This document shows positions 22,277-52,900 of a stretch of DNA of 64,000 nt, one piece after another. The stretch spans positions 83,762,001 through 83,826,000 of the forward strand of contig NC_086379.1 in assembly GCF_036588685.1 (NCBI RefSeq). The letters run 5' to 3'. The position numbers were made by a program, and so were the translations under genes. This DNA is from Mytilus trossulus. Lineage: Eukaryota. The notes beneath the pieces are model-generated. The model was not told where the DNA came from and ran no database searches. It saw only the letters and a program-made list of their open reading frames with translations. Numbering within the stretch: position 1 is the stretch's first letter; each line of letters starts with the position of its first letter.

Positions 22277-25200
22277 GAAACGTGTCGTTATTGTAAAGAA
22301 GATTGGACAGAACATTTTGGTAAAAGATGTGAGGAAATAGAGAAGAAAGATGAAGTTAAACTCAGGCTGCAATTGTAAGAATTAAGTTATTTTTTACCAG
22401 TTATTGACATTTGTCAATTCTTATGAAATTTTGTATATACAAGATGATGTTCTGTTTGCACAACTCATTTAAAAATTTCATTCTAATACGTTTTTCTTTT
22501 CTTTTTTTGTTAATATTTGTACTTTTTCACCACATAAGAATGTACTACATGTAATACCAATAACAAAGTTGTTTGTTAAATTTATTGTCATGCTCACTCT
22601 GTAATAGGACTAAATTGTGTATGTAAACTAATGGTATAAACTCCCAACCTTCAATATTGACTAAGTAAAAAGTCCTTTTATATTTAGATTTTTCTGTTAT
22701 TTTCTTACTAAAGGTTTCATAAATGTCGAGAGAATGTTAAATTTCACGAGCCGTAAGGCGAGGGAAATTCATTCTCAAGACTGGTATTTTTTCGCAAATA
22801 CCCCTCAAGAACATGATATATCTGTTTAATTGCACCGAATGTTAATGTACTAAAACACATTGATGATCGTGACGTTACAAGCATCCAGTCGGATAGAGTA
22901 TTTATTGGCAAATACCACGGCAGAGAGGGTAATATAGGCATATCCTTTTAGCAAATACCCCGGCGGCGTTAAAAATGAATGATATTCATTTGATAAAAGT
23001 AAATTGGTGAAAAATACACTGGCTATCAACCAATCAAAACCCCTGATTCTTACATAAGGTGAAATTATAAGCATAAGGCTTTTCTTGATTTGTAAAATTT
23101 CTTCTGTGTTTTGTAGTGAAGAGAAAATGACTGAAGCCAAGATAAGAACATGTCATAAATGTAAAGCAAAGTTCACTAAATCAGATGGCTGCAATAAAAT
23201 GACCTGTCGATGTGGAGCAAAAATGTGTTATATTTGTAGGCAGCCAAATGTAAGTTTACAGTACTTGTTTGTTAAGTCCTTCATAAGTTACAGGAGTTTT
23301 ATTCTGATGAAGCAATATTACGCATGCTACTGCCCTTGGAAAATTGATTGAAAATGTAAGAGGTCTAAGATAAAAATAATACCTTGTTTCTAAGAAGTTT
23401 ACCAAAGAGAAAACATTGTTTCTTCAGCATGTTCAGGGGAAAGGTTTGGAACTAAATCATATAAATATTCTCATATATAAGTATTAAAATAAAAAATTAG
23501 ACATTAAATTTACAAATACTTGTCCATCATCTCTTTCTTTGCACAAAATCAAATGTTTTTTTCTGTAATTAATTATGACATCATGCTTTGTTACAACTTT
23601 AAATGCATGTTATTGCAGCACAGTAAAATAGAATAAGTTGTTGAAACAAGCATTAGGAATAGCACCTATGGAGTCATATTGTGTAGTACCATATAATATA
23701 AAAGTATTAATTTTATTAGGAGATGTGGTATTATTTCCAATATGACAACTATCTACAAAAGTTTAAATGAATTGGATATTAGCAATTATGTGAACATTTT
23801 CCTAAATCCAAGACAACAATGTTTGTTTTATCTAACTTTGGTTTGACGTTCACAAAATACTCCTGCACAACTTATGATCAATTAAAAGATGATGTACTAC
23901 ATTTTATATCAGATGATTAAATTTAAAAATTGTTCTTTGCTTTCCCTTTTCTTTTGGCTATCTTCATGTGGGTTGAAATAACTTTACTCTTAACAACACT
24001 GATCATACCTGTGTATTTATTTTTTGTGGGCTATAATTTTCATTGATCAAGGAAAACTTTAATTTTCATGGATATTTAATTTTGTGGGTTTGGCAAAATC
24101 TGCATATATTCCTTTAGAAATTTGTAATTTTGCTGTGAATTTAAATTTGCGCTTCTCCTGTACCCACGAATTACATGCTTATTGGTATACAACAAAGATT
24201 ATTGAATCCACAGTAGTCCTTCCAGATTATAAAATATGTTCACCATTTTAATAGACTTTTTGTTATATATCTATATATATATGATTATTGATATTGTCTT
24301 TTAGATTGATTATGATCATTTCTGTCGTCACTTTAGAGATCCAAACAAAGGCAAAAATTGTACTGAATGTACATCATGTTCTTTGTGGTCAAATCCTGAG
24401 GTAAGTCAATGTACATCATATTCTTTGTGGTAAAATCCTGAAGTAAGTCAATGTACATCATGTTCTTTGTGGTCAAATCCTGGGGTAAGTCAATGTACAT
24501 CATGTTCTTTGTGGTCAAGTCCTGGGGTAAGTCAATGTACATCATATTCTTTGTGGTAAAATCCTGAAGTAAGTCAATGTACATCATGTTCTTTGTGGTC
24601 AAATCCTGAGGTAAGTCAATGTACCTCATGTTCTTTGTGGTCAAATCCTGAGGTAAGTAAATGTACATCATGTTCTTTGTGGTCAAATCCTGGGGTAAGT
24701 AATGTACATCATGTTCCTTGTGGTAAAATCCTGAAGTAAGTAAATGTACATCATGTTCTTTGTGGTCAAGTCGTGGGGTAAGTCAATGTACATCATATTC
24801 TTTGTGGTAAAATCCTGAAGTAAGTAAATGTACATCATGTTCTTTGTGGTCAAGTCCTGGGGTAAGTCAATGTACATCATATTCTTTGTGGTCAAATCCT
24901 GCGGTAAGTAAATGTACATCATGTTCTTTGTTGTCAAATCCTGAAGTAAGTTAATGTACATCATGTTCTTTGTGGTCAAATCCTGATATAAATTAATGTA
25001 CATCATTTTCCTTGTGGTCAAATCCTGAAGTAATTAAATGTACATCATGTTCTTTGTGATCAAATCCTGATATAAGTTAATGTACATCATGTTCCTTGTG
25101 GTCAAATCCTGAAGTAAGTAAATGTACATCATGTTCTTTGTGGTCAAATCCTGAGGTAAGTCGATATACAACATGTTCTTTGTGGTCAAATCCTGAGGTA

Positions 25201-28200
25201 GGTCAATGTACATCATGTTCTTTGTGGTTAAATCCTGAAGTAAGTAAATGTACACATGTTCTTTGTGGTTTAATCCTGGAGTAAGTCAATGTACATCATA
25301 TTCTTTGTGGTAAAATCCTGAGGTAAGTCAATGTACATCATGTTCTTTGTGGTCAAATCCTGAGATAAGTCAATGTACATCATGTTCTTTGTGGTCAAAT
25401 CCTGAGGTAAGTCAATGTACATCATGTTCTTTGTGGTCAAATCCTGAGGTAAGTAAATGTACACATGTTCTTTGTGGTCTAAACCTGAAGTAAGTCAATG
25501 TACATCATGTTCTTTATGGTCAGATCCTGAAGTAAGTCAATGTACATCATGTTCTTTTTGGTCAAATCCTGAGGTAAGTCAATGTACATCATGTTCTTTG
25601 TGGTCAAATCCTGGGGTAAGTAAATGTAGATCGTGTTCTTTATGGTCAAATCCTGAGGTAAGTCGATGTACATCATGTTCTTTGTGGTCAAATCCTGAGG
25701 TAAGTAAATGTACATCATGTTCTTTGTGGTCAAATCCTGAGGTAAGTCAATGTACATCATGTTCTTTGTGGTCAAATCCTGAGGTAAGTCAATGTATATC
25801 ATGTTCTTTGTGGTCAAATCCTGGGGTAAGTCAATATACATCATGTTCTTTGTGGTAAAATCCTGAGGTAAGTCAATGTACATCATGTTCTTTGTGGTAA
25901 AATCCTGAGGTAAGTCAATGTACATCATGTTCTTTGGTCAAATCCTGAGGTAAGTCAATGTACATCATGTTCTTTGTGGTAAAATCCCGAAGTAAGTCAA
26001 TGTACATCATGTTCTTTGTGGTCAAATCCTGAGGTAGGTCAATGTACATCATGTTCTTTGTGGTCAAATCCTGATGTAAGTAAATGTACATCATGTTCTG
26101 TATAATCAAATCCTTAATTTTGTGTATACTCAAAACTATAATTATTATGCACATGAATACTTCCCTCATTTCATTTCATATTGAGGAACCTGTACTTAGA
26201 GACCACTTTAGCCTTTTTCTTTGAGTGGTCTCGTAACACAGGTTTGACTGTAAAGTCATTATCTCAGTATTAGGTATTTGTATATTGGAATGCAGGAAAT
26301 GAAAAAAAGTTAGATATTTATTTTTGCTGTTATTGAGATAAATGTGTTTTTTATGACCCACCTACAATAGAAGAGGGTCATTATGTTTTCTGGTCTGTGG
26401 CTCCATTGGTCTGACTGTTGGTTCGTTCGTCCACCACATTGAGTGTCTCGCTTCAGGTTAAAGTTTTTGGTCAAGGTAGTTTTTAATGAAGCTCAATCAA
26501 CCTAAAACTTATAAAAAAGAAGATGTGGTATGATTGCCAATGAGACAACTATCCACAAAAGACCAAAATGACACAGACATTTACAACTATAGGTCACCTT
26601 ACGGCCTTCAACAATGATCAAAGCCCATACCGCATAGTCAGCTATAAAAGGTCCCGATAAGACAATGTAAAACAATTCAAACGAGAACAAACGGCCTTAT
26701 TTATGTAAAAAAATTAATGAAAAACAAATCTGTAACACATAAACAAACAACAACCACTGAATTACAGGCTCTTGACTTGGGACAGGCACATACATAAATA
26801 ATGTTGCGGGGTTAAACATGTTAGTGGGATCTCAACCCTCCCCTAACCTGGGACAGTGGTATAACAGTACAACATAAGGATGAACTATAAAAATCAGTTG
26901 AAAAAGGCTTAACTCATCAGATAGACAAAAAATACAATTGGAAGTGGATGGGTACTTATACATCCCGACACCAAAAAACACTTTGAAGTTTGAACAGATC
27001 TGAGAGTACTCACAGTTATCTGACAGCTGGTTCAAAGCCACTAACAACTAATAAAAAAAGCATGCCTCTAAGACTAAACCAATCAATCTGTATACATCCA
27101 ACATACAATGGGTTTATTGCTAATGATAGGATCTTCCTAATTTTAATGCCAAATTAGATTTTTTACCCAATTTCACGGAAAATGATAGTGTTAGTGGGGC
27201 ATCTGTGTACTTTGGACACATTCTTGTTTATGTCTCTTTCTGGAAATTATCAGGACAATTATTATTAATATTCATATAATATATGTGCTACACATTTGAA
27301 GATTTCCCTTAACATTCTTGCCAGAATTAGTGAGTTTTTTAATAATTCTAATAAAAAAATATGTAGACTAGTCTGACAGTTGTCTTCAATTACAATACCA
27401 TAATAATTTTAAATATTGTTTTTATTTCAAAGTTCTTCATCTTTGGTAGTCGAATGGAAATTTTACAGTGAGACTATGGAAATGAAGATAACAAAATGAT
27501 ACCGAAATTTAAAGAACAAATTTATGGTCAGAAAAATGCCAGACCCTAACTCATGTAAGAGGGACAACAGATATAAAAGGGACAGTCAAACTCATAAATC
27601 AAAAAATAAACTGACAAGGCCATGGCTAAAAATGAAACAGACAAACAGTAGTACACATGACACAACATAGAAAACTATATTTACTATATATTACCATTGT
27701 CAATCTCTTATTTTGTGTTTTGCTTAGTCATTTAATTCCATTTGTTCTGTGAAAAAAGTGGGATTTTAAAATGTCTTGCAGTTCTTCTCTCAGTGGATGA
27801 TTGTCTTTTTCTTGTTGTTTTTTAAGCAAGATGACGAAAGAGCTGTATCAGAAATAAGAAAAGAAGCTGAAGAAGTCAGGAAAACTATGGGTAAGTTGTT
27901 ACTTAAATGATTCAACCTCCATTCAATGCTTCCTCTAATTTTCTATACTCTTAAATGAAAACTTTTGTTGGAAGAGTAATCATTTTTTCCATGGACATAT
28001 TTCTGTGAAAGTGTAGTGAATTAACTGATATGTTGAGTTTTTGGTCATTTTTAGTGTTTCTCAATGAAAATATTTGTTTGAAGTCTCAATAATGTGGGGA
28101 ATATTCTGAAATTTTTTTGATTATTTTGTGAAATAATTTTATTTTGATATTAATTAGAGCAGGAGAGAATTATTGCCAAATTCCATGTGAGTTTTTGTCA

Positions 28201-28882
28201 TCACTTGGCGTCTTTCTTTGTCTGTAAACTTACACAAATCTTCTCCTCTAAATTACTAAAACAAATTTAACCAAACTTGGCCATAATCATAATTAGGGTA
28301 TGCAGTTGTGAAATTGTGTGATGACCTCACCTGCCAACCAACATGGACGACATGGCTAACAATCGAACAATTGGGTGAAACACAAGTGTTGTCTATTGTC
28401 TTGGCCAAATTAAACCAAACTTTGTCTCAATCAATATTGGGTTATCTTATACTATTTATTTTTACTTAAACCTTATTTTACTTAATTTTAAACCACAGTA
28501 GATACAGGTGAGCGACACAGCCTCTTGAGAGCCTATAGTTTTCTTTAAATCTTTTTCTTTCATTTTAAATAAGAATATTGCCTGAAAATTCACTGTTCAT
28601 TTAAATGCAACCATCTAGATCATTAAACTTTATAAGAAACACAGCCAAGATTCACTGCCCAATATAAGGTCTAGCTACAAAAAAAATATATATAAGAAGT
28701 TAGTTTTGTCACTGCATCCAATGCTATAAAGTACAATATATAAATTCTGTAATACATACCTATACCTGTTTTTCTATTATGTAGGATATAATGATGACAA
28801 GTTGATCGGTGCTCCAGATGAACCTCCCAGTAAAAAACCCAGAATGGTGCCTCCTGGAAACCCTCGTGCTCAAGTTGTGTAA
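22277..28882 (+). CDS. RNF216: RNF216/TRIAD3-like RBR E3 ubiquitin ligase, 3' part (end of IBR, RING2, C-terminus); upstream exons not found in window
   Basis: Phase-consistent AG/GT exons 22277-22374, 23117-23249, 24305-24400, 27827-27890, 28785-28882 (TAA) translate to [125 protein letters not shown]...QVV*. This matches the RNF216 RING2 pattern (GCNxMxCRCGAxMCYxCR...YDHFC...CSLW) as recalled. Confidence 0.92.
22690..23068. mobile_element. Hairpin-ended non-autonomous DNA element; same family ends at window positions 1-78
   Basis: Hairpin with a GAGCCGTAAGGCGAG loop at about 22747. The end AAAATACACTGG...AACCAATC...ATAAGGTGAAATTAT is shared with 22-78. Confidence 0.5.
24366..26115 (+). repeat. 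42-bp minisatellite (~41 copies) made of the RNF216 exon end plus its 5' splice site
   Basis: Unit AATGTACATCATGTTCTTTGTGGTCAAATCCTGAG|GTAAGTC. The first copy is the real exon end (24400). Confidence 0.97.
26513..27110 (-). mobile_element. Nin-domain-type SINE inserted in a HINE-like element (26348-27228)
   Basis: Reverse complement of 61705-62252, with tail ...CTCATTGGCAATCATACCACATCTT. Fragments also at about 11465, 19579, 33590, 38620, 42664 and 53148. Confidence 0.8.
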
Positions 28883-29072
28883 TCTTAAATATAAACCCAG
28901 AATAGTGCGTCCTGGACACCCTTTAGCTTGAGCTCAAGTTGTGCAATATTGAATAAAGACCTAGAAAAGTGCCATATAGGCACCCTTGGGCTCTAGTGGT
29001 GTAATATTGGATAAAATCCCAGAATAGTGCCTCTTGTGCACCTTTGTGCTCACGGTGTGTAATATTGGATAA
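28835..29072 (+). repeat. Degenerate ~58-bp x4 repeat spanning the RNF216 stop codon
   Basis: Units start at 28835, 28893, 28957 and 29015: (A)ACCCAGAATRGTGCCTCCTGG...GCTCAAGTTGTGTAATATTGGATAA. Confidence 0.85.
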
Positions 29073-33030: not shown

Positions 33031-33116
33031 GTAATACATAGCATGCATTATAATACAAATCAAAATTTATAAATCTCATTTTAATGAACATTTTCTACTA
33101 TCCTTTTTACACAAAT

Positions 33117-36100
33117 CTATTCAATTAACGATGAAAGTCCACTATTTCTGGCATTTTCAATGATGTCCTTTAATTTGTGTTTTTTAGGAAAAAAGTAAAC
33201 ATTCATCCATTCTTCAGTAGCTGTGTCATAGAATACTTCTGATAGAGATGACTGCAGTCGTGCTTTTAAGATTCGAAAACTCTCCAATAACCTGAAAAAA
33301 TAAATCAAAGTTAATTGAAACCAGTGTATGTATATTTATAGGTTGTATTTCTATATACTTGCAATGCCACTTTCAATACAAATGACTTTAAATCTAAAAC
33401 TGTGTCACTTTTCCATAAAGTGGTGTGTTTTTTTATATTGTATCCTAAGGAATAAAAATTAATTTATACACTTCTTTTTTATTTATTGCTAAAGTCAAAA
33501 CAAAGTGTTATGTCACATTTTTTTTTAACATTTAAATGACTCCCAGTTTTAGCTCATATTAAACCTCTTTACTACACCTACTTTTACTTTGACTTGTTTC
33601 ACATTGTCTTATCAGGGCCTTTTATAGCTGACTATGCGGTATGGTCTTTGCTCATTGTTGAAGGCCGTAAGGTGACCTATAGTTGTAAATGTCTGTATCA
33701 TTTTGGTCTTCTGTAGATAGTTGTCTCATTGGCAATCATACCACACCTTCTTTTTTATATTGTCCTGAGAACTTGGTACTATTATGAGTTTGACACATTG
33801 TATATGGACTATAAAGAATGTAACATTTGTGTTACATTGCAAATTAAACGTATCAACAAACTTCTGAACTTCATATAAACTGAAATCAATAAAAATGAAC
33901 TTACTTTGCTACAGCATTTAGTAAGGGTCCTACATGGACAGGATTGACAAAGTTTCTTTTTATTTGATATTCGTTCATCCAAGTAAATATGCTATAAATA
34001 GAAAAGAGTTCATATTTTATATAATGTTTTACTGATGAACACATATGAAATTAACAACCATCATGCATGTTTCTTCTCTAAATCAATTCAAAATTCAGAA
34101 TGAACATCCTTAATTAAATAAACAGCTGCGTCATGAGCGCATGATACACCAGACGTCTTGTGTGGAAGTTTTATGCAATAATCATAAATAGTTTCTGAGA
34201 AAGTTTTAAGCAATAACCATATATTGTTTTTGAGACACGGCGGGACATGTGAAACCCCAAACCGTGTTTTTTTTTTACAAAAAACTAAATATCACTAAAA
34301 TAAAATTTTGAATCAAAACCAAAAAGTATACAGATCTTTAGATTAATATAACAAAGAAGTGTGTACAGTTTTAAGCAATAATCATAAATTATTTTTGAGA
34401 TACCGCGCGACATGTAAAAAAAACCTCCCCTGTTTATCAAAATACTCAATAACTCCAAAATAAAGTTTTGAACCATCACAAAAGTATACAGATCTTTAGA
34501 TTAATATAACAAAGAAGTGTGTAAAGTTTTAAGCAATAATCATAAATTGTTTAACTGAATAAATGAAAGTTGATGCAACAGCAATTTAAATCTATCAATA
34601 ACACCTTTCATAAATACAACAGATTAGTTGCATGCGCTCGAATAATATCAAGTTTCAATTTACTACAACAGGACTCAATAATTTGTGTATGATTAATATG
34701 ATTTGTTAATATATTTTTCCTTTGTTACGGCTTTGATAGGAAATGTCATAACTACTTTTGTAACATTTGTATTTAAACCTTATGTCAACTGATCTGTGGT
34801 ATACACATGCTTTATGTACATGAATGGAATTCTAGGGTTCCAAGAAAGTTGATATAAGAATAATCTTAAAAATGTGTTGAGTAGATAATTGTAAAGTTTA
34901 AACACATACTATTCAGTGTTTATTTGTGTGGGCTGAATAACTCAAATTTAGTAATCTTTATCGGGCATTCAGAATGTAAGATACTGAGCCCAGTTTATAT
35001 ATCAATAATCTCTGGTTTGATGGGCTCCATTATACATATCTATAGGTTAACATGGATATCAATTGTTACTTGGATGGAGAGTTGTCTCCCTGGTAATCAT
35101 ACCACATCTTCCTTTATCTATATGTATATTGTATATTTACCTCTCATTATGCATTAGATCTTCATAGGAAGCCTCAAGGTGATTGAAATCCAGCATATCT
35201 CTGTACACTTTATGTCCTGGAAAATCACAAGGAGGTGCTCCTAAACTGTGGAGATAAAACTAATGTCACTTAATAGTGTTATAAAGATAGCAAAAGCCAA
35301 AATCAATATTCTGGAAGACTCCATGCAGGTTAATTTAGAAGGCAGATTTAAAATCAATGCTAGATTTCTATTTGACATTTTCTGAGTTTTTGTAACAATA
35401 TTGGTAAATATAAATTCATATGTTTTAACGCACTGTCAAATAAAACATAGCTTGAATTGTTCTTTTCATTGGTCAGACACACAAAGGTGAGATTTAAACC
35501 TGAGAAGGTCAGACACTCCATTGTGACGGTCATTACTTACCACAGAAATGAACTGATAGATAAGTGAGATTTAAACATGAGAAGGTCAGACACACCATTG
35601 TGAAGGTCATTACTTACCACTGAAATGGACTGATAGGCAAGTGAGATTTAAACTTGAGAATGACATACACACCATTGTGAAGGTCATTTATAATACTTAC
35701 CACTGAAATGGACTGATAGGCAGGTGAGATTTTAACTTGAGAAGGTCAGACACTCCATTGTGAAGGTCATTACTTACCACTGAAATGGACTGATAGGCAG
35801 GTGAGATTTAAACTTGAGTAGGTCATAAAAATCATTGTGAAGGTCATTACTTACCACTGAAATGGACTGATAGGCAGGTGAGATTTAAACTTGAGAAGGT
35901 CATACACACCATTGTGAAGGTCATTACTTACCACTGAAAAGGACTGATAGGCAGGTGAGATTTAAAGTTGAGAAGGTCAGACACTCCATTGTGAAGGTCA
36001 TTACTTACCACTGAAATGGACTGATAGGCAGGCGAGATTTAAACTTGAGAACGTCAGACACACCATGGTGAAGGTCATTACTTACCACTGAAATGGACTG

Positions 36101-39100
36101 ATAGGCATGTGAGATTTAAACTTGAGAAGGTCAGACACTCCATTGTGACGGTCATTACTAACCACTGAAATGGACTGATAGGCAGGTGAGATTTAAACTT
36201 GAGAAGGTCAGACACTCCATTGTGAAGGTCATTACTTACCACTGAAATGGACTGATAGGCAGGTGAGATTTAAACTAGAGAATGATATACAACCCATTGT
36301 GAAGGTCATTTATAATACTTACCACTGAAATGGACTGATAGGCAGGTGAGATTTAAACTTGAGAAGGTCAGACACTCCATTGTGAAGGTCATTACTTACC
36401 ACTGAAATGGACTGATAGGCAGGTGAGATTTAAACTTGAGAAGGTCAGACACACCATTGTGAAGGTCATTACTTACCACTGAAATGGACTGATAGGCAGG
36501 TGAGATTTAAACTTGAGAAGGTCAGACACACCATTGTGAAGGTCATTACTTACCATTGAAATGGACTGATAGGCAGGTGAGATTTAAAGTTGAGAAGGTC
36601 AGACACTCCATTGTGAAGGTCATTACTTACCACTGAAATGGACTGATAGGCAGGTGAGATTTAAACTAGAGAATGATATACACACCATTGTGAAGGTCAT
36701 TTATAATACTTACCACTGAAATGGACTGATAGGCAGGTGAGATTTAAACTTGAGAAGGTCAGACACTCCATTGTGAAGGTCATTACTTACCACTGAAATG
36801 GACTGATAGGCAGGTGAGATTTAAACTTGAGAAGGTCAGACACACCATTGTGAAGGTCATTACTTACCACTGAAATGGACTGATAGGCAGGTGAGATTTA
36901 AACTTGAGAAGGTCAGACACACCATTGTGAAGGTCATTACTTACCATTGAAATGGACTGATAGGCAGGTGAGATTTAAACTTGAGAACGTCAGACACTCC
37001 ATTGTGACGGTCATTACTTACCATTGAAATGGACTGATAGGTAGGTGAGATTTAAACTTGAGAACGTCAGACACACCATTGTGAAGGTCATTACTTACCA
37101 TTGAAATGGACTGATAGGCAGGTGAGATTTAAACTTGAGAACGTCAGACACTCCATTGTGACGGTCATTACTTACCATTGAAATGGACTGATAGGAAGGT
37201 GAGATTTAAACTTGAAAACGTCAGACACACCATTGTGAAGGTCATTTATAATACTAACCACTGAAATGGACTGATAGGAAGGTGAGATTTAAACTTTAGA
37301 AGGTCAGACTCACCATTGTGAAGGTCATTTATAATACTAACCACTGAAATGGACTGATAGGAAGGTGAGATTTAAACTTGAGAACGTCAGACACACCATT
37401 GTGAAGGTCAGCATTAAATGTTCCCTTGTTTAACACGGAGAGACAGATTCCCAGACTAGGTAAGGCTTGTGGTAATAACTCACATAGAACAGCATAATGG
37501 TCATACCTACAAAACAAATGCTTTGTGTAAGTAATGAATAGGAAATACCTTCTTATTGACATCTGATCTTTCAACTATACTCTGTTAAATTTGTTTATCT
37601 CTTGTCTTAAATCGGAAGACATCCAATAAAAGGTAGTATTTAGTGATCTTTTAGCATCCATTCCAATCTAGTTTCCACATTTTTTACTATAGACTATAAA
37701 AAATATTGTCAGGAAATTTGCAAATTATTTTCAAATAGTTTTGAAATTTGATATTAGAACTCGATTATTTCATCAAAGAATAAGATTACTATTATAAATT
37801 TTGTGCTTACTCTTACAACTTCATTTTTTCCTATTTTCTTTCCTATCTTTTAACCAACATGACAATGACTTTTAAAAATATACCTGGACCAGCCAGTAAC
37901 AGCATAACCTCGGATTGTTTGGAACTTCTGTTTTTCTTTCTCCTGTAAAGCCACCCAGACGAGATGATTTTCTATGTGGTAACCAATGTTTGTCAAATAC
38001 ATATTAGACCCTGTTGCTCCCTTGAATGCACTACCTAACCAAATATTGGGAAATAGCTTGGAAAACTTGTCCCAAATATCTGAAATATAACGATAGTCAA
38101 TGATTTTGTAAGCACTGAAGGGTAAAGATTGCTTTAATTTATCAGTAGTTCTAAAGATCAAAAGTTCTAAAATTATTGATAAAGGAAGAAACTCAAAATT
38201 TAAAAGATAACTCTAACAATGACATCTTTGATATATTCAAAACAGATCAAAAGTTGAAGCACCTTCCACAAATTATGTAATATCTCAAAAGTAGCTATAA
38301 AACTTGGAAGATTTAGATATCAAGTCAGTAGCATAGGTTTTTGATTGCATTTTATGCAATCTTTACCCAAAATATTTAAATTCAAACTGTTTTATTTTTT
38401 CTTCGATTACAAACAAAAAGTACCTGCACTAAATAGCAAATATAATGTTCAACAAACAGAAAGATATGTTTTGTAAGAGAACAAAATATTTTAATGGAAA
38501 CATGAAAAAGAGACAATTGTTTACTATAATTTGAATAGTTATTATAATTTGTCATCCAACAATTTAACTAGTTTTCATATATTTATAAGTAAGGAGTCCA
38601 GAGTAATGATGAGTAGAGCCTATTCAACTGATTTTAATAGTTTGTTCTATGTTGTGCTGTTACACTACTGTCCTAGGTTTGGGTAGGGTTGAGCACTCAC
38701 AATCATGTTTAACCCCGTCATATTCTTTATGAGCCTGTCCCAAGTCAGGAGTGTAGTTTAGTGGTTGTCATAAGTTCATGTCTGATATATTTGTTTTTTC
38801 TGTAATTGTTTTCTTATGATTTAGGCCTTTAGTTTTCTTAAATGAATTGTCTCATATTTTTTCACGTTCAGGACTTTTATATGGAATGTTCTCATTGTTG
38901 AAGGCAATACAGTTGCCTACAAATGCTTACATCCAATTCATTTGAACTTTGATGTATAGTCTCATTGACATTCATACCACATATCCTTATTTTTATATAA
39001 GTTGAAGAAAAACGATCGACAAACCAGAATATATATAAATAGAGACCATTTTTCAAACAAACAGCTATATGTTATCTTGTGTTTTCACTGTTGTCATAAA

Positions 39101-42100
39101 TATGAAATATATTGTACATGATGTACTTTTTAATGTTTTACCTGGTGGCAATAAAAACTTTGTCAAATAATGCCATATCATAGGTTCTACAAGGCCTGCC
39201 AAACCCGATTCTGTAATATAAAACATTCAAAAATCCTTTACATTCATTAAGTACTCTCAGTCATAAACCTTAACTCAGTATTTGGTGTACAAAATTTGTG
39301 CTGGAAACCCCAAATCCTGTTATTTGATTGGTTAAATTTTGAGCATGAAGATGATAATCCTACTTTCTGCTGTTTGTCAAAGAAAATGTTTTGTTAACAA
39401 TTTGATTTGATTTTTTTTGGGGATAAGATATATATCCTTAGTTAGCAAGCTTACAATACCCCACTACATATTTTTAGCTAAATATCAATAGGGATTCCCC
39501 TTGCCTTTTATGTTAACAAAGAAACCATATACCTAGATCCAATCCATTGTAAGGTCCTGGGTTTGATGTTAACACAATTATTTTTTTCTACTTTTATTAA
39601 CTATGACCTTAAGTAACCCGCAATATAATGTTTTGAACCTGAGATAGAGATCTTTCAATCATTGTGACCAAGTCTGTTTCCAATCCAATTCAATATTCTG
39701 TTATTATTTGAAACCAATTTCTACACTAATTTCAGTTTTAACTATGCCTTTTCCCTTGTAAGGGCTCTGTGACTTCATATAAATATGTTACAATAATTTA
39801 ATTTTAGATGTAACACGTCTTCTGATTGGCTGACGTTAATTTGTTATGAGCCCATAGGCATAATTAAGTCATGTGAACGTGACGCCATCAATGTTTTTTG
39901 TGGTTTTCTACAGTTTAAAATGAAATTTAGAATTAAATTATAAGAAATGACTGTAATAGTTTTTCTGTCTATTCGAAATAACATAAAAAAAATGTGGTGC
40001 ACACTGTTAAATAACCCGCTACATGCATTATTCAGTGTGCACCAAATTTTTTATGTCATTTCTTCATAGACAGAAAATATATTACAGTCATTCCTTAAAT
40101 ATATTGTAATATTGGTTAAATCTGATTTATGTTCCACATGGCAACTATGACCTTATCATTACATAGTCAACTTAACTTCAATACAGAATTTTCTTTCATC
40201 ATTACTTTTGATAGTATATACATGTAAGGATGCAATCCAATATAAAGTATTAGATCTTAGTGATTACCAGCATTTCTGAAAAAGTACAGTGTGAGTATCT
40301 GGTTCCTGTTTCTCAGTTTAGTATGTGTAGTCTTTAGTAGAATGTTATTTTGTCATTTGCCATGGCATTGTCAGTAAGTATTTCTTTGATTAGTGAGTTA
40401 TAAATTTCCTTCAAGAAAGAACATGACACCAAATCATGAAATGTCCAAACCATTCTTTGTCTAGCCAAATTGGTTTTGCTTATGATGAAGGCTGTACAGT
40501 GACTTATAGTTCAAATCATGAAATATCCAAACCATTCTTTGTCTAGCCATATGGGTTTTACTTATGATGAAGGCTGTATAGTGACTTATAGTTCAAATCA
40601 TGAAATATCCAAACCATTCTTTGTCTAGCCATATGGGTTTTGCTTATGATGAAGGCTGTACAGTGACTTATAGTTGCTAACATCTACTACAATTGGCCTC
40701 TGGTACATAGTTTTATCATTTACAATTATACCTAACATCAGCAAAAGAGGTGGAATGCCACTAACTTACCCAGTAAAACAGATAGTTCTGTATGTCTCAG
40801 CATGTCGTCCCACATTATAGCTGTAACTGATGGATACTTGACTTTGATGTAGTTAAGTACAGCCTTACAGTGACTAAAGAAGAGTTGTTGTTGTGTAAGG
40901 TTCTGTACATGCATTCGTTTCTTACATTTATCACAGATCCCAATATGGTAGACCTGTAATTGAATAGCAGAATGATCATTATTTGTCAAATATCTTCTTG
41001 CACTGAAGTTTGTTTTAATTATATAGATGGCTAATAACATAAGGTCCAAGCCAAATTCTAAAGATTGCTTTAGCAGCTGTCTCATAATTATAGTTCTGCT
41101 TCTATATATTTTATCTCCTTTTTTTCATTTGTTTATTTTTTTATCTCCTTATTTTAATTGATAATTTTAAAGAGGAGGCATGCTGTCAAAAATAGTATTA
41201 TAATTAATACTAATAATCCATGTTTTTGTTTTTCTGTCAATGCTACAAGTTTGTAGTGTTTAATGACTATTGTTTTGTAATTAATATGCCTGTCTGTCTG
41301 TTTGTGTGTTTTTGTTGTGCATTTTAGTAACAATCCTATTGTTTGGATTTCTGACTAATAAAATTCTTACTCTTATTCTTATTCCTTGTGTTTCAGTGGA
41401 CTTTTGACTGTTTATATTCTATTCAAAATAATGACTGGAAGATCACTGGCATTATGACTGCAATAACATTAAATTTACAGCAATAAAAGTATGATAAACA
41501 AGTGATTCATAAGACTAGTAAACTGACCTCATCAGCTCCGATATGGAACCACCGTAGACCTTGATGTAATTCCATAACTTGATCAATCATCATACAAACT
41601 GCCATCAAAGAATCTGCTCATAAAACAATAACATATGTCAATGCACTAAATAATACCTTGTTTACAATTCTTCTTTCTTCTTTTTAACACTAATTATTTG
41701 TCTTTCTGATCAGTCAGTTGACTAAGGTAACTTAAAGCTTCATAACAATAAACAACTTTTGATGCCGTCACAAAAACAGTTTCTCAATACTCCTTTATTT
41801 TTTATTTAATTTTTGTGATGTTATATCAAAATAGGACTATTAAAGCAGTGTGATTCGAAACCAGGTTAAGTACTTTGAACCCCTTTCATCGGAAGTTCTA
41901 CTGAGAATTTTTGCATACAGAATTACTTTGTGTTGTTACTTTATTTTATTATAGAGTAAACTGTTTTTCTTAAACTGCTGTACTGGTTATGCATGAACTA
42001 CTTGCCACTGGACATTTACCAAACAACAGTCAATCATGTATAGTTTATGCCTTCTTTTACTTTAAGGGTCCCTATACTAAGGGTTCATTCAATTTTATGG

Positions 42101-45100
42101 TTATGTTATGGAATGTTCTAGTCATTGGGGGATCCAGTGGGGTGCGGTGGGTTCAGGAGGTTGGAACACCCTCTTTTTTTGGCCGATCAATGCATTTGAA
42201 TGGGAGCATATAGCTGGAACCCCCTTTTTCTGGGTTGGGAACCTAGTTTTAGGGTTATAGTTTGTGTTAGGGTAAAGAATGGTTAGAGTTAAATATGGGA
42301 TTTAGGATAGTTGAGTACAGCTCTATAAGGGATGGGACCCCTAAAGTAAAAGAAGGCCATTACAATTTCCGCATCAAAAAGGACATCCATAAGTTACTAT
42401 TCATATATATATATATATCATTACCTGGATTGGAAGGACAAAGAGCCATGGGATAGTTGGGAACTTCTCTAAGAGATCTGAATTTCTCATGTTTCAACAC
42501 AAACTGCAAAAAATAAATCAATTACTTCTTTGCTATTCAAACCTTCTCCATTTGTGATTTTTTTTTGTGTGTTTTAGTTCAGTGAAATCCCAAGAATTTA
42601 ATAACATACCTTTCTATTAATATACATTTCTGGAAACAGTTGCATTATGAGATAAAACTACTGGTCATTTTGGTCTTTTGTGGATAGTTGTCTCATTGGC
42701 AATCATACCATATCTTCTTTTTTATACTAATAACAATATTTGACATAAAGTTTCTACATGTATGTGTCCACTGAACAGGACTTCCCTAAGCTTTGTAGAA
42801 TATAGAAAAAGGATGATACTGAAGTTCAAAGTTCATATTTTTTTTGGAAAATGACAAAAATGTATTTGTTTCATGCGGTCCAGACTTTGAAACATAGTTA
42901 TTTATAATCTTGTACCGTATAGCGGGTTATTTTCGCGGGTGTAAAATTTCGCGATTTTCATTGAACAAGGTATACGAAATATTTTGGCGGTTATTATTTT
43001 GGCGGATTAAAAACTGTTATTAATACCTTTGTATGTACACCTTTAATTTGGCGGAATTTATTTTGGCGATTTAGTTCTGTCTGCGAAAATAAGCGAAAAT
43101 TTGCACCCCGCGAAAATAACCCGCTATACGGTACTCTGATTGAATCACTTAAATGTCAATTATTTAAAGTGTTGTGTTGATGGAAGATTTTTGACATATA
43201 GTCAGATGCTCTGAATGGACAAGCTAGTGCTTGTTGTACTGTATAAACACCTATCTATTGTTGACAATTATCTTTTAGTCCAACTGTTTTCATTAGGTTG
43301 ATGTACACCTTACACCTCATTTTTAGTAATACATTACTATACACTAACCCTAAAAATTAATGTGTGTATGTGTGTGTCTCAGGGTTTCACTGAGTGCTTG
43401 ACAAATTTATCTTACAGTTAATCTGTTACAAATGTTTCTAGATATATGAACATTTCCCATAGTATTTTAAGAATGTCTTGTGTCCAATGTAGTTATAAAA
43501 TAGATTGTACCTCAAAATGGCCAAATGATTGCACTAGAGGGATTATAATCAAACTATTTTCTTCTGCTAGTTGCTGAATTCTGTATATTGCTTCTTTGCT
43601 ACAAAAGAATAACGATTGATTGATTTATGCTGCATCAGCACAAAAGCAAAAGAATATAGAAGCACAGAGACCACACTAAATAATAACTTTCTTTTAATTG
43701 TTCTCAATTAAATTGTGTTTTTAAATAGCTAATTATTATCAAAGTTGCAGGAGCAATATCTGTTTATAGGAATGATGTGTAAGGCATCCATGAATCAATA
43801 ATTATTCAAGTTTGTCATAAGGTTAGAACTAGAGATACATACATTCAGGGGAGACTACTTGTAAAAGTTATCTTTATGATTAAAAGAGGTTTCTGGATTT
43901 CCTGGTTTTGTCAAATCAAAACTCAACTTCGAAAATTTGAAGGCTGAAATTTCAAAAAGAAGAAAGGAGTGTTTCAGAACCATGCCAGCAAGATGAAGAC
44001 ACAGGGTCTGTATCTAAGCTGTACATAGGTAAGTGTCTTGGTCTTTTATAAAAGAAACATTGTACCTATTGCTTCACTATTCTAGATATTTGTATTACAT
44101 AAAGAACAGAACAAACCTGTATGCATGTTGTGATGCTACCTCCTCTAATTCTCCATAGTATGGAAACATATCTTCATATTCAATAAGGAGACCTGTAGCA
44201 CCCAACTTCTTAAACAATGGTATAACCTAAAATTATATCAACAAGACCTGTAGCACCCAACTTCTTAAACAATGGTATAACCTAAAATTAGATCAATAAG
44301 ACCTGTAGCACTCATCTCCTTAAACAATGGTATAACCTAAAATTAGATCAACAAGACCTGTAGCACCCAACTTCTTAAACAATGGTATAACCTAAAATTA
44401 GATCAATAAGACCTGTAGCACCCATCTCCTTAAACAATGGTATAACCTAAAATTAGATCAACAAGACCTGTAGCACCCAACTTCTTAAACAATGGTATAA
44501 CCTAAAATTAGATCAATAAGACCTGTAGCACCCATCTCCTTAAACAATGGTATAACCTAAAATTAGATCAACAAGACCTGTAGCACCCAACTTCTTAAAC
44601 AATGGTATAACCTAAAATTAGATCAACAAGACCTGTAGCACCCAACTTCTTAAACAATGGTATAACCTAAAATTAGATCAATAAGACCTGTAGCACCCAA
44701 CTTCTTAAACAATGGTATAACCTAAATATATATAAATAAGACTATATTTCGTGCACATTTCTTTCGTCTTTTGATACTTCATATTTTAACAAGTTTTTTT
44801 AGTAACTTGTGTTTATTAAGTTGTGGATATATAAGAATAACGATAGGATAGGAACACATTATTTTTCGACCAAGTCTTTCTTGATATGGTATTTGATTGA
44901 CCTGTTACTTTGACAAATCAAATATGAACAATCTAAAAATGTACATGTATTTTTCTGATAGATTTTAATTTCATATATTATACATTGTAATAGCCAATAA
45001 TGACAGGCTGTTTGTAAATGGGGGTTTATACAGCAATTTTCTTAAGACAAGTTGGTTTACCTGTTCTAAATATTCCACCCTAGGCGGAGCACCCTTCAGG

Positions 45101-47505: not shown

Positions 47506-47773
47506 ATACCTGCCAACTGTCACTATTTGTGGAGGATTTTCCCCATGAAGGCATCTAAACGGAATTTTGTAAGAGCAATTTTGTGTACAATTTTAAACAA
47601 AACTATTAATTATGTAATTGCTATAGGCATTTAAAAAATCATAAAGAAAGAAGAAGTAAAAAAAACAACATCAATATACATTTGAAGGACCCCTTGTCAA
47701 AGGTTTTTTAGAACTAAAGGGGCGATCTTGCAAGCGAAACCCCCATGGGCATTTTGAAAAGTTGGCAGGTATA
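47506..47773 (-). mobile_element. MITE (TIR CATACCTGCCAAC)
   Basis: Termini CATACCTGCCAAC...GTTGGCAGGTAT. Confidence 0.75.
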
Positions 47774-48060
47774 AGCGAAGGAATTTTAAGGAGTCCATGG
47801 ATGACTTTGTAGATCGAGGGCTGAGCGCATGTACATGTTCAGTCAACTGCATTCTTATACATGTACCTCTAGCCAATGTTGAATAAAACAAACACATAAC
47901 AATACACACAGTAAATCTCAGTTCAAGAAGTTGTCAGACATTTACTGTTATTAACAGGCTACCTTACAGTATTTTCAAATCCCGTTCAAATGTTCATGCA
48001 ATTCATTTAAGTTATCAATTTGTCGTCTGGCAAAAAATACAAATTCTAATCCTGGTATCT

Positions 48061-48301
48061 ATGGGTCTCATTGGACTCCAAGCCTGACGTAGGATTGCCA
48101 ATGTTTAAATTATTGTGCCATGAAAATGGGAAATGAAGTCTAGCGGGACACGATAAATTACAAAAAAATGAAAATTGTTTACATACATAGTGTAAGCGGG
48201 ATACATGAACCTGACAAAACAGTAAGCAGGATCCAGGATCAGAACCCCCCCCACCACCACCACCACCACCACCACCACCACCACCACCACAATGAGACAC
48301 C
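48061..48301 (+). mobile_element. MITE (TIR GGGTCTCATTG) with (CCA)n microsatellite; second copy at 51692-51920
   Basis: Shares its body and GGGTCTCATTG...CAATGAGAC ends with 51692-51920. (CCA)n lies at about 48251-48290. Confidence 0.7.
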
Positions 48302-48639
48302 TGATTCATGAGTTTATTTACTGGTCCCGACCAGTTTATGAGCATCCATGCTGTTTGCATTGTTTTATTCGTTATTACATATGTTTTTATATGCGGTGAA
48401 AAGCTCATTAGAGCTTATTTAGTAGTATGTTTGTCAATATACGGAATCGAAATAAAGTTTTTATCGACTTTAATATTTAAGTTAACTTTGGGGAAAATGA
48501 GAAAAAAAGATACTTCGGGACTTCATTCAAGAACACTTATCTTGTCAAATATAACATGTGTCAGTTAAAGCACATTGTATATTTACACCTGTTAGCATGT
48601 ATGCAAACCTTTGTGCATCAATCAAAATCAATTCATTTG

Positions 48640-48960
48640 TTATTCATCACGTAGTCATTAATTTTGTTTCAAAACATCATCAGTACCGAGCACTGTTTAC
48701 AGGCAAGATTTCCGTGCAATCTTGGCCAATCAGCTTCAACATCCGGTGTCCCGTTCGGAGTTTCATACGATATGCTTTTACCACAATTCAAAGTAAAGTT
48801 CCGGAAATCCCGAAAACCATTTATTTTGACAATCTCCCATACAGACAGAGTTATCGTCCTTTCCTCCTCAAGATTGAGGAGGAAAGGACGATAACTCTGT
48901 CTGTATGGGAGATTGTTATTTTGATGTGACCAGTGTTTGTAAACAAAACAGTTTTGAGGT
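48640..48960. promoter_or_regulatory. Probable bidirectional promoter region of HEXD (-) and CYBC1 (+)
   Basis: Lies between the divergent genes, both of whose ATG exons begin with a splice acceptor, so non-coding first exons are needed. Locally CpG-richer than the flanks, with a CCAAT box (GGCCAATCA 48724-48732) and an ETS-like TTCCGGAA (48799-48806). TSSs not determinable. Confidence 0.55.
48830..48915. mobile_element. 86-bp fully palindromic MITE with 9-bp TSD (Mutator-like by TSD length)
   Basis: Perfect 42-bp arms around a 2-nt GA loop, flanked by TTATTTTGA at 48821-48829 and 48916-48924. Confidence 0.85.
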
Positions 48961-49998
48961 TAATCAGTTTAGTAACAGTTGTATTGAGGAATACATATAG
49001 TAGTATTTAAAAAAAATTGATAAGTTGTAGAAATATTCAATCCTAACTGTAATTGCAATCATCTTTTAATCTACAGTAGTTTGATAATGGGAATTTAGGC
49101 TTATTACAAATTTGGAACAAATTAAGTGGGTCATTCATTAATTGCCCTACATTTTATTTACATGAGGTGTAAAATAAAATCATCACATTTTCTCATTTTT
49201 TCATGTTTGTTCACTTAACATGCTTAAAGCAGGGACCATGCATGAAGAAATGAACAAACTGTGTGGAGATTTAATCTTTACAGAGGATCATGTTGGGGTA
49301 CATTTGTACCATCATGACAAATAATGGTATAAATTCTTGTCAAATGTGAAATGAAGTTTATAACTGTTATATTTGGAACATGACGATAAAATGTACACTG
49401 TCTTTATGACTGATAAAATGTACACTGTCTTTATGACTGATTTTCATGATTTTGACAAACCACATTTAATTTATTATAAAAATAACTTAAAAAATAATGA
49501 TTTGAGACCTCTGACTGTCAATCACGATAAGGATATAGTTTGATGAATGACAGTAAAATTGTAATATATTTGATGCTTACTGTAGCCTAAAATTACCAAT
49601 TGATGCCTGCATGACATGAAACATGTTAAAGGGCATTTGACCTATGCTTGTTTATACTCCATTATCACTATTTGTTTTCATTTACATACATGTAGGTTCC
49701 TATATCATTTTGATATCACATTTAAAATGTCTGATGCCACTCTGGAAAATTAAAAGGGTATTGTTGTACATGCATTCTATTATGTCAATAGTTCATAAGT
49801 GGCTTATTCCTTAATTAATAAGGTCTATTAGACTGTTATTCTTTCAACTAAGGCTGTAGTTGAGAAAGCTTCTGATTGAGTATTTGACTACAGGATATCA
49901 GAAGGTATTTACCAGAATTAGATAAAATGTATTTCAAGACATGGTTCCAAGAATATCACAATGTTTCAAATAAAGTATTGTTATATTTTCAGATAAAA

Positions 49999-52900
49999 AT
50001 GAGAAGTTTTGTAAAAATTAAGGAAGAGACAGATGCTAGTTTACATCTTGTTAAAGAAAGTGGTCTATATGGTTATGCACTCCTTACAGGTAACATTGTG
50101 TATATTATAAGTATATATAACATATCAATAATGTAAAGTAAGAAATATAGATGATTGTCATGTCTGAGGGGGCGGCAGGACCTTTTTTGGGACATCAGGA
50201 TCAGGTGTTTTTTTCGGGATTGACCCTTTAGCATGTTTAGGAATCCAGGATTTCTTTTTTCAAATTTCAGGTTATCAGTTTGTTTTAATTTCAGGACCTA
50301 ATGTTTTTAAGCCCTGATTTCAGGATCAGGACCCTCCTCCCCCTCCTCATTTCTGTTGACTGCTTTTCTACTTGTAAGCATTTGTTTTATCAATTCACAC
50401 GATTTATTGAAGGAATTAAATGCTAATATATAACTAATAGTATTACACCAAAAGAATTCAAGAACAATACCTCTTGGTTTTCTTAATTTATAAATTTTAA
50501 CTATATTAAATGTACATTAACAAATAATGTATTATACAAATATGAAACAAGAGTGCACACACTGAAATGTCTCGCCTTTACTAATCATTGATATTATGTT
50601 GATAGTCCTAAGTATAAAGCTATATTACAACTGTCACATAAACTTAATAATAACCAAGAGAGCTAAACAAAGACCAATGAACCATGAAAATGAGGTCAAG
50701 GTCAGACAAACCATGCCAGGCAGACATGTACAGCTAACAATGCTTCCATACAACAAATATAGTTGACCTTTTACTTATAGTTTAAGAAAAATAGACTAAA
50801 ACACAAAAACTTAACACTGCAATGAACCTTGAAATTGAGGTCATGGTCAAATAAAACCTGCAAGACTGACAAATAGATCATAATATATTTCCATACAACA
50901 AATCTAGTAGACCTATTGCATATAGTATGAGAAAAACAGACCAAAACACAAAAACTTAACTATAACCACTGAACCATGAAAATGAGGTCAAGGTCAGATG
51001 ACACCTGCCAGTTGCACATGTACACCTTACAGTCCTTCCATATACTAAATATACTAGCCCTATTGCTTATAATATCTGAGATATTGACTTGACCACTTAA
51101 ACTTAACCTTGTTCACTGATCCATATAATGAGGTCGAGGTCAAGTGAAAACTGTCTGACAGGCATGAGGACCTTGCAGGGTAGGCACATACCATATATAG
51201 TTATTCTATTACTTATAATAAGAGAGAATTCAACTTTACAAAAATTATGAACTTTTTTTTCAAGTGGTCACTGAACCATGAAAATGAGGTCAAGGACATT
51301 GGACATGTGACTGGCCGAAACTTCTTAACATGAGGCATCTATATACAAAGCATTAAGCATCTAGGTCTTTCACCTTCTAAAATATAAACCGTTTAGAAGT
51401 TAGCTAACGCCGCCGCCGGATCACTATCCCTATGTCGAGCTTTCTGCAACAAAAGTTGCAGGCTCGACAAAAAACAATGCATATTGGATTCAAGATGTTT
51501 ACAAAAAGTCAGCTGTAACTTTTGAAAAATATAGCAGATTTATGTAGTTAATGTACATATAATATAGTTAATTTATAAATTAAGAAAACCCAGAGGTATT
51601 GTTCTTGAATTCAGTTGGTGTCATACTTACTAACTTCTAGAAAAAGACATAAGAAGATGTGGTATGAGTGCCAATAAGACAACTCTCAATTGTGGGTCTC
51701 ATTGAGGTCTAAGCGTGACGGGGGATTGCCAAATGTTTGTAAGCGTGACCGGTGAAATTCAAATTATTGTATCGTGAATCCAGGAAATGAGGTCTTGCAG
51801 GACCCGGGAAATGACAAACAAAAAAAGAATTGCTTACGTATATAGTGAAAGCGGGATACAGGAATCTAACAAATCAGTAAGCGGGATCCAGTATCAGAAC
51901 CCCCCCCCAATGAGACCCCCTCCATTCAAGTCACACTTTGTGAAAGCAAGCCATGTTATAGGTCAATCTACAGACTTCAACACAGAAAAATATTTGTTGG
52001 TGACAATTTACCTATGACAAATAAAGTTGAACTTTGATCCCATACTACATGTGCTGTTATGGAGTTATGTCCCTTGAAATTAAAACATTTTGAAGTGTGA
52101 ATTCATATCATTTTCAGGAATTATTCCATTAAGTTCAAATATTGTATAATATAAGCTTAAAATGTGGTTGGTGTCTATAATAATGTCCATAATTACTGGA
52201 TTTTGAAGAAGCTGTGAAATTTCTATAAATGAGGAGGGATATGACCTTTATCGGGACTCCAGGATCGTGTCTGACATTAATCAGTTTGAAAAAAAGAATA
52301 TGCATTTCCATTAATATAAAAAAAAATTGGCTGAATTTTTCTTGAAAAATTTATGTATTTATTTCTTATTGTTTTCTGTTTAGCCTTCACAGCCATTGGA
52401 TATGGAGCAGCATCTTACAGTCAAGGTATTGAAATATTAAAAATAGACATGTTTAAATATTATTATGTTGTACATTTTGTGTGTTGATATGGAGCAGCAT
52501 CTTGAAGTCAAGGTATAAAATAGACATGTTTAAATATTAGTATGTTGATTTGAAAAAGGATGTAAAATATTCCATGTACAAGATTTTTATATCATGTATA
52601 TATAACATTCTAATATAGAAAATTGAAGCTTTGTATACAGATCAATTTAAGCAAGCTTTCTGCATCTACTGCATGCAGATTTAGAACTCATGCATAGACC
52701 CATGCATGTATATATTGAGATTTATGTACTCTAAAGAAAAAAAGGTTATATCAAGAGAATAATGATAAACATGAGGCAGTGATATGTTTACACAAACATT
52801 TTTTCATAGATTCCTAATTCTGAAAAGAAGTTTACACACATTTGTTAATCTTCATAATTTTGACAGTCACTATTAGTTTACACATTTGTTTTAAATTTTT

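What the first reader, a model, noticed from the sequence alone, without database searches (positions are those of the whole stretch)
24305..52547. Recurrent tandem amplification of exon boundaries in all three genes: possible splice-site-array system
Seen: five independent, sequence-unrelated tandem repeats each straddle a gene-structure boundary. They are the RNF216 donor (42 bp x~41), RNF216 stop codon (~58 bp x4), HEXD donor (77/83 bp x~25), HEXD acceptor (55 bp x10) and CYBC1 donor (x2). Coding exons are only ~2.5 kb of 64 kb, yet about half of the tandem arrays I can find include an exon edge, and all extend into the non-coding side. Inference: either a transcription- or splicing-coupled duplication process favours exon edges, or the arrays are retained as splicing regulators (decoy U1/U2AF sites tuning productive splicing, polymorphic in copy number). 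I do not know of this being described as a general bivalve phenomenon.
Basis: partly seen in the sequence, partly recalled or inferred. Interest (0 to 1): 0.88.

Follow-up and report, generated by a model that had tools for sequence, protein, structure and literature searches.

The report
Minisatellites seeded on exon edges
Three neighbouring mussel-like (bivalve) genes each carry tandem arrays that grew out of their own exon ends into the intron or 3' UTR. This is a known kind of junction minisatellite, apparently harmless because the exon's own splice site is used, and it looks unusually common in this genome.

Summary
All five arrays exist where stated, and each starts inside a coding exon and runs into non-coding DNA. 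The genes were checked exon by exon: RNF216 (+), a GH20 HEXD-like gene (-) and CYBC1/Eros (+). The array units occur nowhere else in the 1.3-Gb genome, so they grew in place and are not a dispersed satellite. A second copy of the RNF216 3' half lies about 80 kb upstream. It has the same intact exons but only one 42-bp unit, so the 41-copy array is recent and dispensable. RNA contigs join HEXD exons at 37342|35245. The first, weaker donor (GTTAGT) is used and the 23 downstream donor copies, 21 of them GTAAGT, are skipped. Decoy splice sites are no better conserved than the rest of the unit. This is the architecture known from human F7 IVS7, CBS, IFI6, LMNB2 and PDGF, not a regulatory splice-site system. 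The excess at exon edges looks real but modest. In the window, 5-6 arrays touch an edge against about 1 expected (nominal P 0.0002-0.006, post hoc). Genome-wide, three of four splice motifs repeat in tandem 2.5-5 times more often than their reversed forms. The cause is unknown. The scan's first readers noted many similar arrays in other windows of this genome; none were checked here.

The parts
24305..24402 (+). RNF216 coding exon (end of the RING2 region); the working donor is presumed to be at 24402|24403
   Evidence: Matches human RNF216 in PDB 7M4N/7M4M (E 3.8e-6). It ends in phase 0, which fits exon 27827-27890. The exon is identical in the upstream paralogue. Donor use was not checked with RNA.
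24366..26114 (+). 42-bp x 41.8 array. The unit is the last 37 nt of the exon plus the first 5 nt of the intron, which carries most of the donor GTAAGT
   Evidence: TRF. Per-unit listing: the first unit equals the consensus and most of the 41 full units keep the GT. The unit is unique to this locus in the genome. The paralogue L010:5811-5851 has one copy.
27827..27890 (+). Next RNF216 exon; the intron 24403-27826 is half array
   Evidence: Read from the sequence with acceptor, donor and phase. Its translation is conserved in paralogue copy A.
28785..28882 (+). Last RNF216 coding exon, with the stop at 28880-28882
   Evidence: Sequence and phase. Intact in both gene copies.
28833..29072 (+). 58-bp x 4 array. 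The first unit holds the last 16 codons, the stop and a few more bases; the other copies lie in the 3' UTR
   Evidence: TRF, 73% matches. Alignment A1. The whole x4 array is also in the upstream paralogue at 94% identity, so it is older than that duplication.
37342..37506 (-). HEXD-like exon 9. The working donor is at 37342|37341 (GTTAGT)
   Evidence: RNA contig joints 37502(+4)|37880 and 35245|37342 in runs X12 and X13. X13 record 9 spans three exons; the two pieces over exons 9 and 10 show no mismatch. The homologue P0007 aligns through the repeated part.
35485..37410 (-). 77/83-bp x 24.6 array. The unit is the last 69 nt of exon 9 plus about 8 nt of intron
   Evidence: TRF. 24 GT donors were found: 21 GTAAGT and 3 GTTAGT, including the first, working one. 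The unit is unique to this locus. Intron 35246-37341 is 2096 nt, of which about 1857 nt are array.
35139..35245 (-). HEXD-like exon 10, the acceptor partner of the working donor
   Evidence: RNA joint; tblastn with P0007.
44117..44226 (-). HEXD-like exon 2; the acceptor is presumed to be at 44227|44226
   Evidence: tblastn with P0007, residues 34-69 (E 2.9e-9). Sequence. No RNA was laid here.
44189..44726 (-). 55-bp x 9.8 array. The unit is about 17 nt of intron 3' end with the AG plus the first 38 nt of exon 2; the copies lie upstream in the intron
   Evidence: TRF. All copies keep the AG, and the units alternate in a two-unit pattern. The unit is unique to this locus.
52384..52428 (+). CYBC1/Eros exon (presumed transmembrane part) with its donor at 52428|52429
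   Evidence: Open frame, acceptor, donor and phase continuity into the ORF 52824-53024, which has a weak PF15169 hit. Neither Pfam nor PDB confirmed this exon directly.
52399..52547 (+). Two-copy duplication (spacing 87/77) of the exon end, the donor and about 60 nt of intron
   Evidence: the repeat finder families D1 and D2, 94-97% identity.
16260..18019 (+). Comparison case: a 42-bp x 41.9 array inside an RNF216 intron, with no exon edge found at it
   Evidence: TRF. Flanks read. Single copy in the paralogue at L010:3056-3097.

Best explanation
These are five independent minisatellites or tandem duplications that arose in place. In each, the founding unit happened to straddle a boundary between coding and non-coding DNA.

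Shown:
- Each unit is local, unique sequence.
- The exon copy is the edge copy, and all further copies lie in the intron or 3' UTR.
- For HEXD, the spliceosome uses the exon's own, most upstream donor and removes the whole array as intron.
- For RNF216, an otherwise equivalent gene copy lacks the array.

Inferred:
- The arrays arose by replication slippage or unequal exchange. Short direct repeats sit at the unit borders: about 11 nt in HEXD and 9 nt in RNF216, seen by eye. Higher-order units point to later unequal exchange.
- They persist because they are close to neutral. Extra donors downstream of the real one are not chosen, as shown experimentally for the human F7 IVS7 minisatellite. Using any extra HEXD donor or acceptor copy would bring in a stop codon.
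- They are not a regulatory system.

The excess of such arrays at exon edges in this genome looks real but modest. Its cause is not established.
For: - Arrays and exon edges.
- Units unique to the locus.
- The paralogue about 80 kb upstream has single units and intact, 98-100% identical exons.
- RNA joint 35245|37342 in two runs, absent from the DNA run.
- Decoy splice-site columns are not more conserved than other columns (RNF216 3.0 vs 1.6 mismatches per column, HEXD donor 0.67 vs 0.51, HEXD acceptor 0.27 vs 0.25).
- The old 58-bp array has decayed to 73% identity.
- Published precedent with the same behaviour: PMC1557585.
Against: - Splice-site use was seen for one array only, and from assembled contigs, which drop rare isoforms. 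Low-level decoy use is therefore not excluded. One X7 contig end carries a variant base typical of decoy copies.
- Neutral birth at random places does not explain the excess at exon edges.
- Two unrelated 42-bp arrays in the same gene copy gained nearly the same number of units (+41 and +40). Simple random slippage does not predict that.
- Copy numbers were not verified on long reads.
Confidence: 0.65

Rival explanations
1. Exon edges, or coding/non-coding boundaries in general, are true mutational hot spots for tandem duplication in this genome. One possible cause is repair between very divergent haplotypes or paralogues in which exons are islands of homology, with out-of-register re-annealing at the homology border. 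Another is polymerase pausing at splice sites. This concerns the cause of the excess and is compatible with neutral persistence.
For: - In-window excess of 5-6 arrays against about 1 expected.
- Tandem triples of splice motifs exceed their reversed forms for three of four motifs, while the single 9-mer does not.
- By distinct arrays: about 17 for CAGGTAAGT in the first ~335 Mb, against 4 for the reversed motif in the same span and 6 for the scramble in C1-C4, about 400 Mb.
- Donors, an acceptor and a stop codon are all hit.
- Both 42-bp arrays sit where identity between the two RNF216 copies drops.
- Many first-reader notes of the same pattern in other windows (unchecked).
Against: - CAGGTGAGT shows no excess.
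- Match counts are dominated by a few long arrays, and controls range from 72 to 178.
- The one donor-motif array outside the window whose flank I read (C1, near 84.70 Mb) shows no obvious exon upstream.
- The in-window test is post hoc.
- No mechanism was tested.
Confidence: 0.3
2. The arrays are selected splicing regulators. Decoy U1/U2AF sites would tune productive splicing, protect against donor loss, or supply exons of variable length.
For: - Most decoy sites are intact.
- HEXD decoys match the consensus better than the working donor.
- The RNF216 unit is 42 nt, so it is in frame.
Against: - Only the first HEXD donor is seen in RNA contigs.
- There is no extra conservation of splice-site columns.
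- The paralogue works with the same exons and no array.
- The second RNF216 unit carries an in-frame stop.
- The 77-bp and 55-bp units shift the frame.
- The oldest array is decaying.
Confidence: 0.07
3. Coincidence and ascertainment. Minisatellites are so common here (about 18 loci in 64 kb) that a few touch exons by chance, and readers report the ones that do.
For: - The window was chosen for the pattern.
- One motif and one scramble blur the genome-wide signal.
Against: - Nominal P of 0.0002-0.006 in the window.
- The reversed-motif controls are free of annotation and of reader bias, and three of four show an excess.
Confidence: 0.15
4. Assembly artefact: the arrays or their copy numbers are not real.
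For: - Copy number was not checked on long reads.
- Two arrays have almost the same size.
Against: - Unit variants form higher-order patterns typical of real arrays.
- An independent DNA run has a mismatch-free contig across the far array border, 35183-35537. RNA-run contigs match interior copies.
Confidence: 0.03

Closest known systems
Human F7 intron 7 37-bp VNTR, and the like cases listed with it: IFI6 (6-16) intron 2, CBS intron 13, LMNB2, PDGF intron 4 (PMC1557585)
   Same: It is a minisatellite whose first monomer spans the exon-intron boundary, so the authentic donor is repeated many times in the intron. Only the most upstream site is used, even when downstream copies fit the consensus better. 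The HEXD RNA here shows the same behaviour.
   Different: Here the arrays are longer (up to 41 copies). There are several in three adjacent genes. One is built on an acceptor and one on a stop codon. The units hold mostly exon sequence (37 of 42 nt and 69 of 77 nt), whereas the F7 unit holds 4 exon bases. Copy-number polymorphism was not tested.
Tandem arrays of dual-specific AGGT splice sites, as in polyubiquitin UBC (PMC10809524)
   Same: Splice-site motifs are reiterated by a tandem repeat inside a gene.
   Different: In UBC the sites lie between coding repeats and are used stochastically to give isoforms. Here the copies are non-coding and, where tested, unused.
Satellite-like repeats carried by mobile elements in bivalve genomes (Helitron/Helentron- or MITE-associated; from my own knowledge)
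   Same: Abundant short tandem arrays in bivalve introns.
   Different: Those units are dispersed over many loci. The five units here occur only at their own gene.
Intron gain by tandem duplication of an exon segment holding AGGT (Rogers' model; from my own knowledge)
   Same: A tandem duplication supplies extra splice sites and adds intronic sequence without changing the mRNA.
   Different: The introns here were already there. The RNF216 paralogue has the intron without the array, and the HEXD intron keeps 239 nt of unique 3' sequence.

Membership tests
Junction minisatellite (F7 IVS7 type) | Head-to-tail array of several monomers inside a gene | tested here: met
   TRF; unit listings.
Junction minisatellite (F7 IVS7 type) | The first monomer spans the exon-intron boundary, so the authentic splice site is reiterated | tested here: met
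   HEXD donor by RNA joints. RNF216 by PDB homology and phase. HEXD acceptor by homologue alignment. CYBC1 only by frame and phase.
Junction minisatellite (F7 IVS7 type) | Only the exon's own, most upstream donor is used | tested here: met
   For HEXD only: joint 35245|37342 in runs X12 and X13. These are contigs, so rare isoforms could be missed. RNF216 and CYBC1 were not tested.
Junction minisatellite (F7 IVS7 type) | Copy number varies among individuals (VNTR) | tested here: inconclusive
   The two RNF216 copies differ by about 40 units. Whether they are paralogues or mis-placed haplotypes is open. No long reads were available.
Dispersed, element-borne satellite | The same unit is found at many loci | tested here: not met
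   Own-genome searches return only the locus itself, plus single units in the RNF216 paralogue.
Regulatory or decoy splice-site array | Decoy sites are used, or are conserved beyond the rest of the unit | tested here: not met
   No decoy joint is among those listed. Splice-site columns are no more conserved than others.
Intron created by tandem duplication | The intron is absent before the duplication | tested here: not met
   The paralogue has the same RNF216 intron with a single unit. The HEXD intron has a unique 3' part.

The most novel reading that the evidence does not exclude
In this bivalve genome, boundaries between coding and non-coding DNA are hot spots for the birth of minisatellites. 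The excess would be several-fold over intron interiors and perhaps an order of magnitude over the genome at large. The cause would be a mechanistic link, for example repair between highly divergent haplotypes that re-anneals out of register at the edge of conserved exons. The result would be thousands of splice-site ladders that lengthen introns and offer raw material for exon extension.
Probability: 0.3. Interest if true: 0.75.

Novelty: new member of a known kind. Interest (0 to 1): 0.5.

Why it matters
Each array is a natural version of the classic F7 experiment. Up to 40 identical or stronger donor copies sit behind a working one, and the first still wins. A genome with many such loci would give a large natural test set for the rules of splice-site choice. 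If the excess at exon edges holds up, it would point to a so far undescribed bias in where tandem duplications arise or survive. For annotation, these arrays are a practical trap, because gene predictors can pick a decoy site. If the excess does not hold up, these are ordinary neutral minisatellites.

Tried and rejected
I used whole-genome pattern counts instead.
- Asking for 30 loci in a pattern search returned 30 overlapping pieces of a single array. Its upstream flank showed no clear exon.
- Pfam on single HEXD exons gave no GH20 hit. The family was confirmed through the full-length homologue P0007.
- PDB and Pfam gave nothing for the CYBC1 exon that carries the duplication.
- An element-borne satellite was rejected.
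- A new intron made by duplication was rejected.
- A weak 65% match of the RNF216 array to a 48-bp array on contig C1 comes down to a shared 14-nt core.
Exons were searched one by one by reference.
- Five keyword searches of the paper library found no description of this as a general feature of molluscs. That is not proof that none exists.
Full report
**The arrays.** Tandem Repeats Finder lists about 18 array loci in the 64-kb window. The ones named in the finding are all there:
- 24366-26114: 42 bp x 41.8
- 28833-29072: 58 bp x 4
- 35485-37410: 77 bp x 24.6, with 83-bp variants and a 391-bp higher-order unit
- 44189-44726: 55 bp x 9.8

The two-copy CYBC1 duplication is below TRF's threshold but is found by the repeat finder (52399-52547).

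**Gene identities and exon edges.** I checked these exon by exon and searched no joined model.
- The exon 24305-24402 (+) aligns to human RNF216 in PDB 7M4N (E 3.8e-6). The exon before it has an IBR_1 hit. Phases connect 24402 to 27827-27890 and then to 28785-28882, which holds the stop.
- The minus-strand gene is HEXD-like. One RNA-confirmed exon found 352 relatives. The full-length relative P0007 carries Glyco_hydro_20, and tblastn with it maps twelve exons from 45117 down to 33147.
- CYBC1/Eros is supported by PF15169 (E 1.7e-9) on 54468-54716. The small exon with the duplication rests on frame and phase only.

**How each array sits on its exon.**
- The RNF216 unit is the last 37 nt of the exon plus the first 5 nt of the intron. 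The exon copy equals the array consensus, and most of the 41 full units keep the GT.
- The 58-bp unit holds the last 16 codons and the stop.
- The 55-bp unit holds the intron's AG and the first 38 nt of HEXD exon 2. All copies keep the AG.

**RNA evidence for the HEXD donor array.** I laid contigs of three RNA runs and one DNA run on 35101-41100.
- Two RNA runs join 35245 to 37342, with GT..AG on the minus strand.
- One 422-nt contig links three exons: 38005-37880, 37502-37342 and 35245-35139.
- The DNA run has none of these joints.
- So the working donor is the first copy, GTTAGT at 37342|37341.
- The 77-nt unit is 69 nt of exon plus about 8 nt of intron. The 2096-nt intron is about 89% array.
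- All 23 further donor copies, 21 of them the stronger GTAAGT, are skipped in these contigs.
- Contigs cannot exclude rare isoforms. One X7 contig end carries a base typical of the decoy copies, which is either an allele or decoy use.

**Origin.** Searches of the window's own 1.3-Gb genome with the 42-, 77-, 55- and 58-bp units, and with the intronic 42-bp unit at 16260, return only the locus itself. The one informative exception is a second copy of window 1-32581, which lies about 80 kb upstream on the same contig.
- Its RNF216 exons are intact and 98-100% identical in protein. Its introns are 73-96% identical.
- It has one copy of each 42-bp unit, so the window's copy gained about 40 and 41 units after the two diverged.
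- The 58-bp x 4 array is in both copies and is therefore older. It has decayed to 73% identity.
- By eye, short direct repeats flank the founding units. This is the usual substrate for slippage.

**Function.** In the decoy copies, the splice-site columns vary as much as or more than the other columns. Using any extra HEXD donor or acceptor copy, or the second RNF216 unit, brings in a stop codon. The paralogue does without the array. I see no sign of selection for the decoys.

**More than chance?**
- In the window, 5 clear and 1 marginal array contain a mapped exon edge, against 0.7-1.3 expected when one unit per array is placed at random. P(>=5) is 0.0002 to 0.006. This is nominal and post hoc.
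- Genome-wide, I counted triples of an exact 9-mer spaced 15-60 nt, which only tandem arrays produce. The tool's own reversed-motif control gave the comparison.

| Motif | Matches | Reversed control |
|---|---|---|
| CAGGTAAGT | 350 | 72 |
| AAGGTAAGT | 262 | 106 |
| CAGGTGAGT | 170 | 178 |
| TTTTTCAGG (acceptor) | 161 | 33 |
| GATGACTGA (scramble) | 177 | 79 |

- By distinct arrays, CAGGTAAGT gives about 17 in the first ~335 Mb. The reversed motif gives 4 in that span and 12 genome-wide. The scramble gives 6 in contigs C1-C4, about 400 Mb.
- As a single word, CAGGTAAGT is as common as its reverse (11072 vs 10329), so base frequency does not explain the difference.
- Only a minority of motif occurrences can be real splice sites. 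A 2-5-fold overall excess would therefore mean a larger excess at real sites, if real sites drive it. I could not verify that. The single outside array whose flank I read shows no obvious exon. One acceptor-motif array on the same contig plainly starts a thrombospondin-type exon.
- First-stage notes from many other windows of this genome describe the same pattern. These are unchecked leads.

**Comparison with what is known.** Borensztajn et al. 2006 (PMC1557585) describe exactly this architecture in human F7 and cite IFI6, CBS, LMNB2 and PDGF. They show that only the most upstream donor is chosen, even against better downstream copies. The arrays here are new members of that kind. What may be new is how common they are in this genome and that acceptors and a stop codon are hit as well. 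Five keyword searches found no report of this for molluscs.

Noticed in passing
window 1-32581, and G000:C7:83684642-83713093 (loci L009, L014, L010, L015): There is a segmental duplicate of the RNF216 3' half about 80 kb upstream. Exons are 98-100% identical in protein and exon 24305-24402 is identical in DNA, while introns are only 73-96% identical. This could be gene conversion, strong constraint, or two haplotypes placed in tandem by the assembler.
   Followed up: partly
window 16260-18019 and 24366-26114: Two unrelated arrays in the same gene copy share the period (42 bp) and almost the same gain in copies (+41 and +40 units against the paralogue). Both lie where identity between the two copies drops. 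This is unexplained.
   Followed up: partly
window 41587-41629: A weak 15-nt x 2.8 repeat (TRF score 51) straddles the acceptor of HEXD exon 5. Part of it is an in-frame five-codon echo inside the exon.
   Followed up: no
G000:C7:84705829-84706517: A 68-bp array whose unit is an acceptor plus the start of a thrombospondin-type exon (the WSTWGEW motif). It lies 0.9 Mb from the window on the same contig.
   Followed up: no
L013:3192-7263 (G000:C1, near 111.78 Mb): A 48-bp x 81.5 array that shares a 14-nt core with the RNF216 unit in reverse orientation. This is probably chance.
   Followed up: partly
window 56409-57852: A 24-bp x 60 array downstream of CYBC1, in a 2-kb stretch with strong GC skew (0.35). 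It is not at a mapped exon edge.
   Followed up: no
window 12006-12272, 19865-20446, 50673-51142, 61100-62650: Arrays with 121-147-bp periods belong to repeats seen at several places in the window and in neighbouring loci. They are likely element-borne, unlike the junction arrays.
   Followed up: partly
window 35246 (run X7): An RNA contig joined at exon 10 continues into exon-9-like sequence with a C where the assembly's first copy has A. This is a synonymous allele or use of a decoy copy.
   Followed up: no
window 48251-48290: A perfect (CCA)13 microsatellite.
   Followed up: no
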